A stretch of 63,219 bases of DNA, filler included, from Octopus bimaculoides (taxonomy: Eukaryota), in NCBI RefSeq assembly GCF_001194135.2. It is 7 parts of 7 records of this genome, joined end to end, with 100 filler letters (N's around TTAATTAATTAA, not from the genome) between each part and the next. Parts side by side here need not be neighbours in the genome. Positions count along the whole stretch, not along the records: positions 50,256 to 55,731 come from NC_069007.1; 6 more parts are not named here. One strand, given 5' to 3'. Made by a program: the position numbers and the translations under genes. Of this stretch, positions 50,256 to 55,831 are shown piece by piece (position 1 is the first letter of the stretch; each line of letters begins with the position of its first letter). The notes beneath the pieces were generated by a model that worked only from the letters and a program-made list of their open reading frames with translations, did not search any database and had not been told where the DNA came from.

Positions 50256-50314
<59 letters not shown>

Positions 50315-50414
50315 CATGCATATATGTCTCTGTGCATGCATATGTATGTATATATATATGTGTGTGTGTGTATACATATATAAATATACATACACATACA
50401 TACACACACATATA

Positions 50415-50475
<61 letters not shown>

Positions 50476-50839
50476 GATTAAAATACATTTCATATTCAAA
50501 CTTATATAGAATCCACAGACGTAATTATATATACTTATATATAATTTCTCATAAAACTTTTGTATACAAAATATAATATCCATAAATCATAAAAATATTT
50601 TACGAAATGTAAGCTTTAATGATTATACATCATAATTCATGGATATAATTGATATTTTCAAGAGAACACATTTGTATCCATATATAGTAATCTTATTAAT
50701 ATCAGTATTCATCGCAATGTTTTAATTTCCTATAAATAATATTTAAACTTCTATTTTATACTAAATGTAATTGTTTAATCTTAATATTTTATATTTAATC
50801 ACGAATACAGTTTCTTATGAACTCACTTTCTTGTTGCAG

Positions 50840-50911
50840 AGAGCTGGGTGAAAATAATATCACGAATATTGATATAGGAATCATGCAAACGTTTAACCAT
50901 TTAAAGAGATT
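50840..50911 (+). CDS. LRR exon A (72 bp, phase 2-2): (L)ELGENNITNIDIGIMQTFNHLKR(L)
   Basis: ttcttgttgcag acceptor, gtaagt donor, exactly 72 bp, open frame, fits the LxLxxNxIxxI...L LRR pattern. Confidence 0.85.
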
Positions 50912-51068
50912 GTAAGTCTTTTTGATACTATTTCATTCATTGTATATTTCAAAAATTATCCCTTAATTTTATGTTTTGAGTTAAACCTAATTGTTTAGCC
51001 TTAATATTTTATATTTTGTTACAAATCTACTCCATTCAATTTCTTATGAACTCACTTTTATGTTGCAG

Positions 51069-51140
51069 AAATCTAAGTTATAATAAAATCCAGACTCTTA
51101 AAAAGGGCTTCTTCCAGGGGCTTACCGTTTTAGAGGAATT
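51069..51140 (+). CDS. LRR exon B (72 bp, phase 2-2): (L)NLSYNKIQTLKKGFFQGLTVLEE(L)
   Basis: ttatgttgcag acceptor, gtaagt donor, exactly 72 bp, typical-class LRR consensus LxLSxNxIxxLxxGxFxGLxxLxxL. Confidence 0.92.
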
Positions 51141-51197
51141 GTAAGTAGGATCAATCAGTCTTGTTGATACTATTCATTCACGATGTATTTTATTCCC

Positions 51198-51257
<60 letters not shown>

Positions 51258-51559
51258 TGTCTCACTATATCATTCTCACTCTTTTATGCTCTATATATGT
51301 ACGTGGGTATGTGAACGTAAAGATATATGCATGTCTGTCTGTACGTGTGTGCGTGTGTGACAGTGTGTGTGTATGTGTCATAGTGTGTGAGTGTGTCAGC
51401 ATGCTTATGCAATTCTAGCTGTAAATCTTTTACAATGGTTTAGTTCTAGAGTAGCTCTGATTGTATAAAACTGACCAAGTTTTTGCCAACCATGACATTC
51501 ATATCTAATTGTACATTTAGGACTACATTATTTGTAAGTATACAGGGCTTTTACATTTG

Positions 51560-51850
51560 AATTGTAAGGAATTTAGCTACTTTTCAGATAATTTAACTTA
51601 TCCTAAAACAGAACGTTTTGTAAAAGGAAATGGTTTTGATCTATGCCTTCCTCCTACCTGAATCTTTGTGGCTCAGCCCCGTGACCATGGTATGTTACGG
51701 TCATTGAAACTTAAAAACAGGTCAGAGTTCATGCAGCACTTTCTTCTTGTACTAAATAATGTGAGTCATCCTATGGATTTCATAAAGGAAATTAACTTAA
51801 AGGGTACGATGTGGTCATTAACCTCTGCTAAGGACTGCCTGGGATAAAAT
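51560..51850 (+). pseudogene. pogo/Tigger DDE transposase C-terminal fragment (intronic)
   Basis: SDNLTYP...LCLPPT*IFVAQPRDHGMLRSLKLK...DFIKEINLKGTMW resembles LDNxPAHP...FLPPNTTSxxQPxDxGII. Confidence 0.6.
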
Positions 51851-52009
51851 AGACAAAAAAAAAAAAACACTTCAAGGTGGCTGGCACAAACTGAGGTCAA
51901 CTATAATGTTTGAAGATAAGGATAACGAACCAGACTTTACTAGATTCAGGATTTTTAGTCAAAAGAAATTACCAGGCGACTTGAGTAGAGTATGATAGGT
52001 GTATGACTA

Positions 52010-52250
52010 ACCCAGAGTGACGTACCAGAGATGACATAAGGAAACCTAAAAGACTGGATGAACTGGAAGCATCCAAATTAGTCTTGTGGAACCTACTTCA
52101 TGGTGTTGTAAGAAGAGGAAAACGTCACAATTACATCGACAACTTGATCGCAGACATTGGCCTGGAATATATCCAGGACCTCGAGGCAGTGATGAAGGAC
52201 CGAGAAGTATGAAAGGTGGAATTTGTTGCAGCGGTTCGGGTTGGAATCTG
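52010..52250 (+). mobile_element. RTE LINE 3' fragment (intronic)
   Basis: EASKLVLWNLLHGVVRRGKRHNYIDNLIADIGLEYIQDLEAVMKDREV matches the RTE C-terminal pattern LVLWxPxHGxxxRGRPxxTYID. Confidence 0.75.
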
Positions 52251-52399
52251 ACCATAGGATCTCAGGCCTGCTCTTCCAGACGAATGGAGCAGAGCTACGC
52301 ACTCTTGTGATGGACAGATAACCGAGATGCTACGTCTGTGTAGTGACTGACCATAGCGATCTTAGCGTTCTGCCTACACAATCGAAGTAAGTGGAGAAG

Positions 52400-54430
52400 A
52401 GGCACCAACTACCATTAAAACCATCGCTGCTACAAAAACAAAGCAACTGTGGCAAAAACAAAAATAAAATAAAGACGTATCGTAAAAATCTACAACACTA
52501 ATAGCAGTAACAGAGGTGGCGAAGATGTTTGCAACAGTAGCAACATCTTCAGCATGGCCGCCAACAGCAGCAGCAGCAGCAGCAGCACCTCGAGCATCTT
52601 CAGCAACCTAAGCCACCACTCAGAGAAAATCCCAGTCCAACTATCTCTCCCCCTTTGTACATGCTCAAAAACAGACAGGCACACATACACTGAGACATGC
52701 CATTGTTTCCATCCGGACTGGAACTTTCCAACTAGACAACCTTATCTTGCAGCTGAGGAGGAGGAACCTTGGGAATCAAGGATACAAAAAAAAAAGTCAA
52801 AAATAAAAATGCATACAAATGACTCCCAATACAAAAATCAAAGCTATTCCAAACACTTCCAATCCAACAACAACTTACACACCATCACCACCATTACCTC
52901 CAGTATCAGCAACAAAAAGAAAACACCCAAGCATAACAACAACAAGAACACCACCAGCGGACAAACACACAACAATTTGACCTAAGCAAACGACTCCACT
53001 CAAATATACAAAAGGATTTAACACCTACCTTTATGTTAGTTTGAAAAGAATCTAATTCATAGCACAAATGGGAGACAGAAATGAAGGGAGAACTATTAAT
53101 CAAAGCCAAGATCTCGTGCTAAAATGTTATAAGATAATGAGAGGCGTGGAGGCTGCTTTAGTCAATGCCACTAACAGGATTGTGAAAGATTTCCTCAAGA
53201 ACCCCCAAGCAGGCATGGAATCGAATGATCCTGTTCGTCATACAATATAATCGCTAAGGTAGGTGATCCTTTCCCCTTTTTCTTCTTTCCAACCATTATG
53301 GCATCTCTGAGTGCAGGATGTGGAAATGCTCGTGACATGAGATGGGCCTGGAAGTAGGTCACCTGTTCAATGACTTCAGGTCACTGAGCACGGATGTGGT
53401 AGCTATCAGCGAGACCAAGATTTCCGACAAACGTTGTTTCACGGCCACTTTTGGACAAATTTGAGATCTATGCGTCTTTTAATCGGCCTGGAATGAATAA
53501 CAGAGTGGTGGTGTTGTTTAGAGATAAGTCCACGCTTCCTGGACCTGGCGGGTAAGTTGGTAGTTTTGGACCTTGGCAGTAGCGAAAGTAGTGCCTTCAG
53601 ACTAGTGGCTATCTAGTGACTCCGAGATGGGCAAGGCAGCCAGACTTCTACAGGTGTTTAGAGGTGTCCCTGGGAATGCCTCGCTCAATAGTTTTTGTAG
53701 GCAACTGGAATGCCTTCTTGAATGCACGTTTGGATTGAGAAGTGCAAACTGATAAGAGAGGAATGTACAGAAGCGTCGCAAGTCTGCTCAGTCTTTTTCA
53801 GCTGATTGACCGGTCCCATCTGGATTTCTCGAATGTGTCTACGTGCACATAGGCAAATAGCATCGGATCATCCAGATTGTAGCTTTTGTAGGCTAACTGA
53901 AGGAATAGCATATCCTGTCCACAGTTCAAAGTAGCTGGCTACACAGACCACAAATTTGGAATATGATAGGTTCCATATGCAGGGTCCAAGACACTGTAAG
54001 CTGAATGCGTCTTTCCCAACGTGCCAAGTTTTCAGAGACGCTAAGTACGAAGGTTGCATTGTTAGAGCTAGGCACGTACTCTAAGACACATGGAAACGAA
54101 AGTCGATGGGCCTGAGTGGAAGAGGCGCAACGTAGTAACAGTTCCACAATTTGGTATTTGACAGACTGGGAAGGCCAATTGCAACTCGAACCCAAGTAGA
54201 TGTGTGCAGAATCACAGTGACTTTTTGCTGAACTGGACGGGCGCATGCTGGATCGGAGACGGGGGTGGATTTTATCTCCAGTCTCGACGGCTTGCCGCAG
54301 CTCTCAGCAAGGGATGTGGAGTTCTGTGAATTTCCAATAACAGCCGATGACATACATGATGCGATGACTTCGAGCTTTACTTTCATATACCAGACTTGTT
54401 TGGTGATCTTTTGATGAATAGAATTGATAT
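52400..54430 (+). mobile_element. L1/Tx1-like LINE fragment (ORF1 tail plus degenerate APE domain)
   Basis: From about 53300: decayed GCGNAR, DVVAISETK, VVVLFR, FRLVAI, GNWNA and GYWKFN-like motifs; low-complexity CAG/ACC stretch upstream. Confidence 0.7.
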
Positions 54431-54612
54431 TTTCAGCACACACACTTGTATCCATACATGATAATTTTATTAACCTTATTAACATCAATATTGCAGTGTT
54501 TTATTTCCAGTAAATATAATTCAATCTTCTATTTTATGTTAAACCCAATTGGTTATTAATCTGCTCATTTTTATATTATGAACTCATTTTTACGAACTCA
54601 TTTTTGTTACAG

Positions 54613-54684
54613 AAATTTAGGACATAATGAAATCACTACTATTGAAGAAGGAAGTTTTGAGAATCTTTTCCGGTTAAAAAAGTT
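54613..54684 (+). CDS. LRR exon C (72 bp, phase 2-2): (L)NLGHNEITTIEEGSFENLFRLKK(L)
   Basis: tttttgttacag acceptor, gtaagt donor, exactly 72 bp, typical-class LRR; junction TT+A gives Leu. Confidence 0.92.
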
Positions 54685-55831
54685 GTAAGTTGGATCAGTC
54701 TTGTTGACACCCTTTTCATTGACGATATCTAAATATTTAATGTTTCCCCTTCTCCTCCTATCTCCATCAGTCTGTCTCTTTGGCTGTCAGTCTCTTTGTA
54801 TGTTATATTTGCACACACACATATACGTCATATCTATGCGCCTGTATATATGCTCATAGGAATGTGGTTCTGTAAGTTGTGTGTAAGGAGGTGTGCGTGT
54901 GTGTGTGTTTGAGAGAGCATATGTGTATACGGAGGTGTCTGTCTGTTTTCTTGTGCGCGTATATATGTATGTATATGTGTAAGAGTGTGAATTGGGGTGA
55001 GAGTCTAGTGTATCTGCTACATCTTAACCATGTTTTCGTCATCCTCTTTTTCTCCTCATTCTTTTCTTTCTTCTTTTCCTATTCTTTTTCGTTCTCGCTC
55101 TTCTCCAATATTATCGCCGTCATCTTTAACTATAGTACTACATGATAAGTCTTCCCCTATTTCATTATCAATGATCCGCTGTTGGGCGACGCCCCTTAGT
55201 TATCAGCCAACATCTTGTTTTCCTTTACCAAACCTCATGATTTTATGACTATACCAACTATGATTTCTGTCTGCTCTCTCAGCCCTACCCCTAACAGAAA
55301 ATGCCCTTTATTCTCTCAGCCTTAGATATACAAGTTTTGATAAACTAGTCTATAAATTAAAACTGACCCCATAAAAAACAAATAAAATTAGTGACAGGCA
55401 AAATCTTCTTGACAATTTATTTATCAACTTCTATGTTATAGTAGAGGCAACATGTTCTTTGTTTATCTCCTTAACTTCTTGGAGATTTTAGGTATAATTA
55501 TACTAATGTGTCCATCTGTTCTAATTTAATTAAATTCTATGTCTTTGTGCAGCTGAGGATTGTTCTGCATTTTAAATTGACGTAATGATTACATTGTTCA
55601 ATTAAATGGAGTTGCATGAAACTGCATTACCTCTGCATTACCTCTGCATGAGTTGCATGAAACAGCATGAAACTACATTACCTCTGGATATCCTTGTTGC
55701 TTATTTTGATTTTAATCACCTTACTTTGAAANNNNNNNNNNNNNNNNNNNNNNNNNNNNNNNNNNNNNNNNNNNNTTAATTAATTAANNNNNNNNNNNNN
55801 NNNNNNNNNNNNNNNNNNNNNNNNNNNNNNN

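What the first reader, a model, noticed from the sequence alone, without database searches (positions are those of the whole stretch)
50700..54730. Hidden LRR gene built from tandemly duplicated single-repeat exon cassettes
Seen: three exact 72-bp exons with AG/GTAAGT sites, all phase 2-2. Every junction gives TT+A = Leu, so any cassette can be skipped, added or swapped in frame. The flanking introns are homologous across all three units for about 100-150 bp upstream (ttctattttat...aattg...t(c)ttatgaactca...cag) and about 35 bp downstream (cagtcttgttga(t/c)ac...ttcatt). Established: one-LRR-per-exon genes include relaxin-type and other LRR GPCRs. Inference: a receptor ectodomain growing by exon-module duplication, a substrate for combinatorial splicing or cassette shuffling. 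The rest of the gene lies outside the window or in the gaps.
Basis: partly seen in the sequence, partly recalled or inferred. Interest (0 to 1): 0.8.

Follow-up and report, generated by a model that had tools for sequence, protein, structure and literature searches.

The report
Three spliced single-repeat LRR exons
The piece holds three consecutive, always-included 72-base exons of an expressed leucine-rich-repeat gene that grew by copying an exon-plus-intron unit; this gene layout is well known, and no cassette skipping or shuffling was seen.

Summary
Exons 50840-50911, 51069-51140 and 54613-54684 (+ strand) are each exactly 72 nt, run AG|exon|GTAAGT and sit in phase 2. Each encodes one 24-residue LRR.

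Spliced RNA contigs from 9 runs in 4 studies use exactly these sites. The longest are about 2.57 kb. All join E1-E2-E3, and no other joint was found. A further LRR exon follows outside the piece.

The intron flanks are homologous (69-87% identity, z 4-13) and are more alike than the exons (58-62%). The same flanks lie next to at least 8 other LRR exons on other contigs of the same genome. Exon-unit duplication is therefore supported.

Combinatorial splicing is not supported, and no docking/selector-type RNA pairing was found. An LGR or relaxin-receptor identity cannot be tested: the rest of the transcript is out of reach, and the 92 known residues match IGFALS, LRIG1, TLR13, LGR4 and VLR about equally.

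Against a sister species the exons change about as fast as distal intron, with 10 non-synonymous and 2 synonymous changes.

One-LRR-per-exon, same-phase architecture is already described for Slit, LGR, NLR and Tetrahymena genes. Verdict: an ordinary member of a known kind. The one modest curiosity is that the flanks are better conserved than the exon cores.

The parts
50840..50911 (+). Exon E1: 72 nt, phase 2-2, one 24-residue LRR ((L)ELGENNITNIDIGIMQTFNHLKR(L))
   Evidence: Sequence and translation. RNA contigs start this block at 50840 and join 50911>51069. It lies at nt 211-276 of the transcript contigs.
50912..51068 (+). Intron 1: 157 nt, GTAAGT...TGCAG. It consists almost entirely of a downstream-flank copy followed by an upstream-flank copy.
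   Evidence: Joint 'skips 157, GT..AG' in 9 RNA runs. Alignment. Its fold is no more stable than shuffled sequence (z +0.5).
51069..51140 (+). Exon E2: 72 nt, phase 2-2, one LRR ((L)NLSYNKIQTLKKGFFQGLTVLEE(L))
51141..54612 (+). Intron 2: 3472 nt, enlarged by microsatellites and repeat or transposon-like sequence
   Evidence: Joint 'skips 3472, GT..AG' in 8 RNA runs. Tandem repeats. Multi-copy depth.
54613..54684 (+). Exon E3: 72 nt, phase 2-2, one LRR ((L)NLGHNEITTIEEGSFENLFRLKK(L)). The transcript continues into a further LRR exon (…YLNGNALQYI) that is not in the piece.
   Evidence: Loose end behind 54687. The next exon is absent from the piece.
50636..50839 (+). Upstream intron flank of unit 1, homologous to 54411-54612 (unit 3) and in its 3' ~125 nt to 50945-51068 (unit 2). 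It contains a YTNAY branch-point-like CTCAC and a polypyrimidine tract.
   Evidence: (families D7, D9, D10, D12)
54411..54612 (+). Upstream intron flank of unit 3. It includes a 14-nt tandem duplication of the branch-point segment at 54576-54605.
51141..51185 (+). Downstream intron flank of unit 2 (GTAAGTAGGATCAATCAGTCTTGTTGATAC...TTCATTCACGAT). It is homologous to 54685-54730 and 50912-50950.
   Evidence: (D13). The same motif follows other LRR exon ends on at least 6 other contigs.
54685..54730 (+). Downstream intron flank of unit 3
51836..54202 (.). 2367-bp block inside intron 2 that is present in this species but absent from three related species. It contains multi-copy segments and a decayed endonuclease-like reading frame (about 53330-53960, + strand). 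It is not part of the coding gene.
   Evidence: Contigs of X13 and X15 run 51353-51835 and then straight on from 54203. Depth is 45-250x single copy at 52064-52239 and 53824-53999. Weak Exo_endo_phos match, E=0.007, 16.6 bits, below the 24.5-bit cut-off.

Best explanation
These are three consecutive, constitutively spliced exons near the 5' end of an expressed mRNA of about 2.6 kb. The mRNA encodes a protein with an N-terminal array of 'typical' 24-residue extracellular-type leucine-rich repeats.

Each exon encodes exactly one repeat. The intron always splits the codon of the second Leu of LxxLxLxxN after its second base (TT|A or TT|G).

The array grew by tandem duplication of an exon-plus-intron unit: at least 200 nt of upstream intron, the 72-nt exon and about 45 nt of downstream intron. 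Unequal crossing-over is the presumed mechanism. The flanks still align, and the same flanks border at least 8 further LRR exons elsewhere in the genome, either later exons of this gene or paralogues.

Since then the exon cores have diverged more than the flanks. They evolve at about the neutral rate between species and keep only the scaffold residues (L, N, I/L, F).

The splice signals are strong and uniform (GTAAGT donors, CTCAC branch-point-like motif, T-rich tract, CAG), and all three exons are included in every assembled transcript.

Shown: the exons, phase, splicing, expression, flank homology, additional cassettes, and the flank-versus-exon contrast. Inferred: unequal crossing-over as the mechanism, the secreted or membrane location, and the reason why flanks stay more alike than exons.
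For: - Exon anatomy and translation. LRR_8 E=3e-27.
- Best solved-structure matches are all extracellular LRR ectodomains: IGFALS, LRIG1, TLR13, LGR4, VLR, LRRC32.
- Spliced contigs in 9 RNA runs from 4 studies carry identical joints 50911>51069 and 51140>54613. Contig lengths are 2572, 2571, 2485 and 2419 nt. E1 sits at nt 211-276 and about 2.0-2.1 kb follows E3.
- The next exon starts GTATCTCAACGG..., giving L-YLNGNALQYI, another LRR in the same phase.
- Flank homology: z 4-13 against shuffles. Unit 1 versus unit 3: flanks 168/193 identical against exon 44/71, Fisher p=1.7e-5.
- Other contigs of the same genome match the flanks and continue into LRR-coding sequence in the same frame, for example ...NKIKTIEN...NIENGTFQDL...DKGSFQDLSNLKK and ...NFQNLTKLEK. 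One 2-kb contig carries two such cassettes about 1 kb apart.
- The same three exons are intact in related species, with no gaps or stops.
Against: - The full transcript could not be read, so the domain architecture, the total repeat number and even a signal peptide are not established.
- Between species the exons show no purifying selection: 12/216 substitutions, 10 non-synonymous and 2 synonymous, against 22/378 in distal intron. This would also fit a decaying gene, although it is expressed, correctly spliced and open in all species seen.
- Simple duplication followed by neutral drift does not by itself explain flanks that are less diverged than synonymous sites of E1-E3 and E2-E3 (pS 0.68 against 0.13-0.26; only about 13 synonymous sites).
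- Contigs cannot exclude low-level exon skipping.
- No predicted protein containing these 73 residues exists in the 5.8-billion-protein collection.
Confidence: 0.85

Rival explanations
1. The gene is specifically an LGR-type (glycoprotein-hormone, LGR4-6 or relaxin-type) LRR-containing GPCR, and these exons encode its hormone-binding ectodomain.
For: The one-LRR-per-exon, phase-2 layout is the classical layout of LGR genes (own knowledge; RXFP1 has 18 exons with exon-skipping variants, PMC7196478). LGR4 and LGR5 are among the better solved-structure matches (E 3e-33 to 1e-23). A 2.6-kb mRNA could just hold a type-A receptor of about 700 residues.
Against: IGFALS, LRIG1 and TLR13 score higher than any LGR, and VLR, LRRC32, LRRTM and TLR3 score similarly, so the similarity is generic. 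Only 211-276 nt precede E1, leaving little room for LDLa modules. A 17-LRR type-B receptor would need more than 2.8 kb of coding sequence. Hormone receptors are normally under strong purifying selection, whereas here 10 of 12 exon substitutions against a sister species are non-synonymous. No 7TM sequence could be examined.
Confidence: 0.12
2. The cassettes are a substrate for regulated combinatorial or mutually exclusive splicing (Dscam-like or NLRP3-like), with the conserved intron flanks acting as regulatory elements.
For: Skipping any cassette keeps the frame (72 nt, phase 2-2). The flanks are more conserved than the exons. In-frame LRR exon skipping is known in NLRP3, Slit and RXFP1 (PMC6642158, PMC7196478).
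Against: All spliced contigs in 9 RNA runs contain E1-E2-E3, and no alternative joint was reported. All three donors are perfect GTAAGT and the acceptors are near-identical, which favours constitutive use. There is no excess complementarity between downstream and upstream flanks (z +0.2 to +1.4), and intron 1 has no stable structure (z +0.5).
Confidence: 0.06
3. The flanks are kept alike by ongoing gene conversion or unequal exchange among cassettes (concerted evolution), while selection for different binding surfaces removes conversions that reach the exon cores. The locus would then be a germline-diversifying recognition gene or gene family.
For: Flanks are 80-87% identical against exons at 58-62%. 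Synonymous differences in E1-E3 and E2-E3 (pS 0.68) far exceed flank divergence. Between species the flanks are only mildly slower than distal intron (19/546 against 22/378, p=0.10), so strong purifying selection on the flanks is not evident. Paralogous contigs match the flanks and exon edges at 80% or more and lose the match inside the exon. dN is about equal to or above dS between species.
Against: The numbers are very small: about 13 synonymous sites per pair and 12 exon substitutions. E1-E2 shows pS 0.26, similar to flank divergence, which fits plain duplication. Splice-proximal constraint, AT-rich composition and alignment choice inflate flank identity. No conversion tract was demonstrated.
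Confidence: 0.3
4. The gene is a decaying or non-functional transcribed locus. The exons drift neutrally and the LRR pattern is a remnant.
For: The exon substitution rate is about the same as in distal intron, and the non-synonymous to synonymous ratio matches site proportions (10:2 against 167:40 sites). No predicted protein was found in a very large collection.
Against: The frame is open, the length is exactly conserved and all six splice sites are intact in four species. Scaffold residues are kept in every repeat. The locus is expressed at contig depth 5-60 in 9 runs with precise splicing.
Confidence: 0.08

Closest known systems
Human and mouse LRR gene families with strict exonic modularity: Slit1-3 (72-bp single-LRR exons), NLRs including NLRP3, LRRC37 (Hoss et al. 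2019, PMC6642158, which cites Little et al. 2002 on Slit)
   Same: Each short exon encodes a whole LRR module. All introns are in the same phase, so any exon can be removed or added in frame. This has been explicitly discussed as a precondition for alternative splicing. The 72-nt single-LRR exon size of Slit is from my own knowledge of Little et al. 2002.
   Different: Here no alternative use of the modules is seen. NLR modules are 171 nt and of the RI class. A Slit mRNA is much longer than 2.6 kb. Membership in any of these families is untested.
LGR / glycoprotein-hormone / relaxin receptor genes (e.g. RXFP1: 18 exons, many exon-skipping variants; PMC7196478)
   Same: LRR ectodomain encoded one repeat per exon with same-phase introns (own knowledge). 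LGR4 and LGR5 are among the sequence matches.
   Different: No 7TM or LDLa evidence. The similarity is no better than to IGFALS, LRIG1 or TLR13. Evolution is fast here. The short 5' region argues against relaxin-type LDLa modules.
Tetrahymena LRR genes with arrays of exactly 90-bp exons (Xiong et al. 2019, PMC6564038)
   Same: Arrays of equal-length LRR exons. More than 98% of the introns are phase 2, giving a 'junction amino acid'. The proposed origin is clonal expansion of an exon-intron unit by unequal crossing-over, and the genes evolve rapidly.
   Different: Exon length is 90 nt there and 72 nt here. That is a ciliate with tiny introns and thousands of copies. Here at least 11 cassettes were detected, and the introns range from 157 nt to more than 3 kb.
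Dscam-type mutually exclusive exon clusters and lamprey VLR cassette assembly
   Same: Tandem homologous cassettes that could in principle generate receptor diversity.
   Different: The defining features are absent. There is no alternative inclusion and no docking/selector complementarity. Unlike VLR donor cassettes, these cassettes have canonical splice sites and are all spliced into one mRNA, with the same germline order wherever a spanning contig was laid.

Membership tests
LRR superfamily, 'typical' 24-residue extracellular class (Pfam LRR_8 / LRR_1) | Tandem repeats with LxxLxLxxNxL...F..L consensus and a 24-residue period | tested here: met
   Three repeats in the piece plus a fourth in the transcript loose end. 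LRR_8 E=3.2e-27, 94.5 bits against a cut-off of 27.
Genes with single-LRR exon modularity (Slit / LGR / NLR-like architecture) | Each repeat on its own exon, with equal exon length and identical intron phase | tested here: met
   72 nt each and phase 2-2. Boundaries confirmed by RNA joints.
LGR-type LRR-containing GPCR | Rhodopsin-type 7TM domain C-terminal to the LRR ectodomain | not testable with these tools
   The rest of the transcript lies outside the piece. Only 30-nt loose ends are returned.
LGR-type LRR-containing GPCR | LRR sequence specifically closest to LGRs | tested here: inconclusive
   LGR4 scores E 3e-33, but IGFALS (2e-37), LRIG1 (5e-35) and TLR13 (9e-35) score higher.
Relaxin-type (type C) LGR | N-terminal LDLa module(s) before the LRRs | tested here: inconclusive
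   Only 211-276 nt of transcript precede E1. That leaves room for a UTR, a signal peptide and at most one small module. The sequence could not be read.
Alternatively spliced cassette array (Dscam-like, or NLRP3-like exon skipping) | Transcripts that differ in which cassettes are included | tested here: not met
   Nine RNA runs give a single joint pattern, E1-E2-E3. Limitation: the data are assembled contigs, and the raw-read runs had no coverage.
Alternatively spliced cassette array (Dscam-like) | Competing intronic RNA pairings (docking and selector sites) | tested here: not met
   Duplex energies between downstream and upstream flanks are no better than for shuffled sequence (z +0.2 to +1.4). 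Intron 1 fold z is +0.5.
Tandem exon-unit duplication arrays (as in Tetrahymena 90-bp LRR exons) | Homology extends from the exon into both flanking introns, and further copies exist in the genome | tested here: met
   Flank identity 69-87%, z 4-13. At least 8 other contigs carry flank plus LRR exon.
VLR-type somatically assembled LRR cassettes | Cassettes without splice sites that are copied into an incomplete germline gene, with DNA differing between cells or individuals | tested here: not met
   Canonical GT-AG sites are used in RNA. The arrangement is the same in DNA contigs of X9 and X2 and in related species.

The most novel reading that the evidence does not exclude
The locus belongs to a fast-evolving invertebrate LRR recognition gene or gene family. 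In it, recombination or gene conversion keeps the intron flanks of all cassettes alike, which preserves the capacity for unequal exchange and cassette gain or loss. Selection meanwhile drives the 72-nt exon cores apart. This would be germline diversification of a binding surface by exon-cassette dynamics. The evidence does not exclude it: flanks are more alike than exon synonymous sites, dN is at or above dS between species, and at least 11 cassettes share flanks. None of these observations is statistically strong.
Probability: 0.2. Interest if true: 0.5.

Novelty: new member of a known kind. Interest (0 to 1): 0.2.

Why it matters
As it stands the finding matters little. It documents one more LRR gene whose repeats map one-to-one onto same-phase exons. 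It also gives clean evidence, in the form of surviving intron homology, that such arrays grow by duplicating exon-intron units.

It would matter more if the full locus confirmed two things: that the flanks are homogenised while the exon cores diversify, and that the protein is a rapidly evolving recognition receptor. That would be a compact animal example of cassette-level evolution of a binding surface. It could be tested with data that already exist, namely the genome scaffold, sister-species assemblies and the 2.57-kb transcripts.

Tried and rejected
**Searches that led nowhere**
- The search for homologous proteins with the 73-residue spliced peptide found only 3 word-sharing candidates and none significant. 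The gene product or close orthologues are therefore not in that collection.
- I did not submit a single-exon query or a 3-row profile. Ranking by summed score would be dominated by giant LRR proteins and could not identify the gene.
- The look-up of encoding contigs on two long intronic ORFs, tried to obtain a longer scaffold, found nothing on record.
- PDB and Pfam searches confirm an LRR only and cannot assign a family.
- Rfam and tRNA scans gave only sub-threshold miRNA or snoRNA 'hits' on (AT)n/(AC)n microsatellites and no tRNA. I rejected these as artefacts.
- A six-frame regex scan for further LRR exons in the piece found none. The previous and next exons of the transcript are not in the piece.

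**RNA and read-level checks**
- Raw-read RNA runs X24 and X25 had essentially no reads on the exons at 6% sampling, so rare isoforms could not be quantified.
- Duplex and fold tests for intron-bridging or competing structures were negative.

**Rate and identity tests**
- Cross-species rate contrasts are not significant (p 0.22, 0.10, 1.0): exon versus flank, flank versus distal intron, and exon versus distal intron.

**Other points**
Individual-level comparison at E1-E2 therefore rests on X9 and on the index.
- I considered that the flank similarity might come from a high-copy mobile element. I rejected this because depth over the units is about single-copy to a few-fold, and the alignments run continuously through the splice sites into LRR-coding sequence.

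Full report
**1. What is in the sequence**

The piece (50256-55731) is AT-rich (GC 0.21-0.47) and full of microsatellites. Each is exactly 72 nt. Each is preceded by ...TTG TT(G/A) CAG and followed by GTAAGT. Each begins with A and ends with TT.

Read in phase 2, the blocks give:
- (L)ELGENNITNIDIGIMQTFNHLKR(L)
- (L)NLSYNKIQTLKKGFFQGLTVLEE(L)
- (L)NLGHNEITTIEEGSFENLFRLKK(L)

These are three perfect 24-residue 'typical' leucine-rich repeats. The intron falls inside the codon of the second Leu of LxxLxLxxN. Pfam LRR_8 matches at E=3e-27. The exons are equal in length but not in sequence: they share only 42-43 of 72 bases. No further LRR-like exon is present on either strand of the piece.

**2. 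The exons are real and constitutive**

Assembled RNA contigs from nine runs of the same species come from four studies: X17, X18, X19, X20, X29 and X39-X42. They join 50911 to 51069 (skipping 157 nt, GT..AG). In eight of the nine runs they also join 51140 to 54613 (skipping 3472 nt, GT..AG). The contigs match the exons without a single mismatch.

The longest contigs are 2572, 2571, 2485 and 2419 nt. E1 starts at nt 211-276 of them, and about 2.0-2.1 kb follow E3.

The 30-nt loose ends show two things:
- The preceding exon ends ...ATIMRVFKY + TT.
- The following exon begins GTATCTCAACGG..., which reads (L)YLNGNALQYI. This is a fourth LRR in the same phase.

Neither neighbouring exon lies in the piece.

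No run shows any other joint involving these exons. Two raw-read RNA runs sampled at 6% had no coverage. Rare skipping therefore cannot be excluded, but there is no positive evidence for it.

**3. The cassettes are duplicated exon-intron units**

Flank identity between the three units, compared with shuffled sequence:

| Segment | Identity | z against shuffles |
|---|---|---|
| 120 nt upstream of the exon | 74-77% | 7.6-13 |
| Same, minus the last 25 nt (branch point, tract, AG) | 69-74% | 4.8-8.6 |
| 45 nt downstream of the exon | 72-80% | 5.9-13 |

Units 1 and 3 align continuously over 50636-50917 and 54411-54690 (212/264 identical). This shows a unit of at least about 320 nt. Intron 1 is just a downstream flank followed by an upstream flank.

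The flanks are not a high-copy mobile element. Depth over the units in DNA contigs is about single-copy to a few-fold.

They do recur, however. At least eight other contigs of the same genome match a flank at 80-97% and then run on into LRR-coding sequence in the same frame and phase. Examples are ...HNKIKTIEN...NIENGTFQDL...DNNNITNAG...DKGSFQDLSNLKK|GTAAGT and ...NFQNLTKLEK|GTAAGT. One 2-kb contig carries two such exon ends about 1 kb apart. These are further exons of this gene, or paralogues, or both.

Growth of the solenoid by tandem duplication of an exon-intron module is therefore well supported. Unequal crossing-over as the mechanism is inference.

**4. An oddity: flanks are more alike than exons**

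Exon identity is 58-62%, whereas flank identity is 69-87%. For unit 1 against unit 3 the counts are 44/71 (exon) against 168/193 (flanks), Fisher p=1.7e-5. The other comparisons give p=0.01-0.04.

Paralogous contigs behave the same way. The 80%-or-better match covers the flank and the conserved exon edge, then breaks inside the exon.

Nei-Gojobori counts:

| Pair | pS | pN |
|---|---|---|
| E1-E2 | 0.26 | 0.46 |
| E1-E3 | 0.68 | 0.38 |
| E2-E3 | 0.68 | 0.37 |

Only about 13 synonymous sites are available per pair, so these numbers are indicative only.

Against a related species (organism D, about 94% identical, no gaps in exons) I counted the following substitutions:
- 12/216 in the exons, of which 10 are non-synonymous and 2 synonymous. 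The changes are M>L and R>E in E1; Y>H, K>R, T>I, L>I, F>S and G>R in E2; and T>N in E3.
- 19/546 in the flanks.
- about 22/378 in distal intron.

None of these contrasts is significant (p 0.22, 0.10, 1.0).

I draw three conclusions:
- The exons are under little or no net purifying selection.
- The flanks are at most mildly constrained between species.
- The flank-over-exon similarity among cassettes needs something beyond plain duplication and drift. The candidates are splice-proximal constraint, diversifying selection on the variable positions, or homogenisation of the flanks by gene conversion or unequal exchange.

I rank the last as a live but unproven idea (about 0.3).

A splicing-regulatory RNA structure is not supported. 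Downstream and upstream flanks are no more complementary than shuffled sequence, and intron 1 has no unusual fold.

**5. What gene it is**

This could not be settled:
- The 92 known residues match IGFALS, LRIG1, TLR13, LGR4, VLR, LRRC32, LRRTM, LRRC15, TLR3 and LGR5 at comparable scores.
- The large protein collection holds nothing sharing enough words with the spliced peptide.
- The exhaustive search tool refuses spliced sequences.
- Look-ups meant to recover a longer scaffold failed.

What can be said is that the LRR array starts within about 80 codons of the mRNA 5' end, and the whole mRNA is about 2.6 kb. This fits a secreted or membrane LRR protein of at most about 700 residues. It leaves little room for LDLa modules and is too short for a 17-LRR type-B LGR. 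The fast amino-acid evolution is also unlike a hormone receptor. I put the LGR reading at about 0.12.

**6. Surroundings**

Intron 2 (3472 nt) begins with a (CTTT)15 run and GT-rich repeats. It contains a 2367-bp block, 51836-54202, that contigs of three related species lack: they run from 51835 straight to 54203. The block holds segments present at 45-250 times single-copy depth. A decayed + strand frame within it gives a weak, sub-threshold Exo_endo_phos match when stitched across frameshifts (E=0.007). It is most simply a recent LINE-like insertion, or a deletion in the other lineage.

The 3' end of the piece (about 55230-55731) is a very high-copy repeat. Rfam hits are microsatellite artefacts, and no tRNA was found.

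**7. Comparison with what is known**

- Strict exon modularity of LRR domains, with short single-module exons in one phase that allow in-frame skipping, has been described for several human families including Slit and the NLRs. It was explicitly discussed there as a precondition for alternative splicing (PMC6642158, which cites Little et al. 2002).
- LGR genes such as RXFP1 have many exons and many exon-skipping variants (PMC7196478). That glycoprotein-hormone receptor genes carry one LRR per same-phase exon is my own knowledge.
- Tetrahymena has arrays of exactly 90-bp, phase-2 LRR exons with a 'junction amino acid', explained by clonal expansion of exon-intron units (PMC6564038).

The present locus works like these and is a new member of that kind. 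It fails the defining tests for Dscam-like alternative arrays and for VLR-like cassette assembly.

**8. Verdict**

- Observation: confirmed.
- Interpretation: partly supported. Module duplication, yes. Combinatorial splicing, no. LGR identity, undetermined.
- Novelty: new member of a known kind.
- Interest: 0.2.

The only feature worth a follow-up is that the flanks are better conserved than the exon cores.

Noticed in passing
window 51836-54202: A 2367-bp block inside intron 2 is present in this species (also in X9 and X2 contigs). It is absent from contigs of three related species, which join 51835 directly to 54203. It contains multi-copy segments (52064-52239 at about 250x, 53824-53999 at about 45x single copy). 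It also holds a decayed + strand endonuclease-like frame (about 53330-53960; Exo_endo_phos E=0.007, below the cut-off). No target-site duplication was evident.
   Followed up: partly
window 55230-55731 (especially 55408-55731): Very high-copy dispersed repeat. Contig depth is thousands of times single copy in all four species and it is abundant in RNA contigs. It has an internal 41-nt tandem duplication (55609-55686), and many copies show a 49-nt deletion joint, 55622>55672. It looks SINE-like, but no tRNA or Rfam match was found.
   Followed up: partly
window 54576-54605 (and 54564-54582): The branch-point and pyrimidine segment upstream of E3 is tandemly duplicated: TTA(T/C)GAACTCATTT appears twice. 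Organism C lacks 19 nt here. So the 3' splice region of this cassette is length-polymorphic between species without affecting exon use in this species.
   Followed up: no
window 52581-52879: RNA reads and contigs (X17, X24, X25, X40) show a 'joint' 52581>52879 with ACAACA inserted and non-canonical GC..AC ends. The region is CAG/CAA-rich low complexity. This is most likely cross-mapping of a transcript from another copy of the repeat, not splicing at this locus.
   Followed up: no
window 50935 to about 50970 (intron 1): In X29, X39 and X40 an RNA contig from elsewhere matches a short stretch of intron 1 starting at 50935. Its loose end is TTTAAAAATGACTGCTAAGTAAGATTTAGA, and depth is about 100 in X39 and X40. 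Its origin is unknown. It may be a paralogous cassette flank retained in another transcript.
   Followed up: no
window 50256-50480, 51198-51258, 51290-51400, 54860-54990: (AT)n, (AC)n, (CTTT)15 and GT-rich imperfect microsatellites. They give sub-threshold Rfam 'miRNA' hits (mir-297, mir-466 and others, all far below gathering scores) that are composition artefacts.
   Followed up: yes
window 50600-51200: DNA runs X1-X4 and X6 are reported by the word index to hold all sampled words of 50480-51200. Yet no full-length contig from them was laid on this stretch, only short paralogous pieces. X9 gave a 700-nt contig (50511-51210, 5 differences). This is probably a tool or filter effect near the flanking microsatellites.
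   Followed up: no
window 54371-54413: A short segment just upstream of the unit-3 flank is multi-copy, about 25-400x single copy in four species, with consistent loose ends on both sides. It is a fragment of another dispersed repeat abutting the cassette homology.
   Followed up: no
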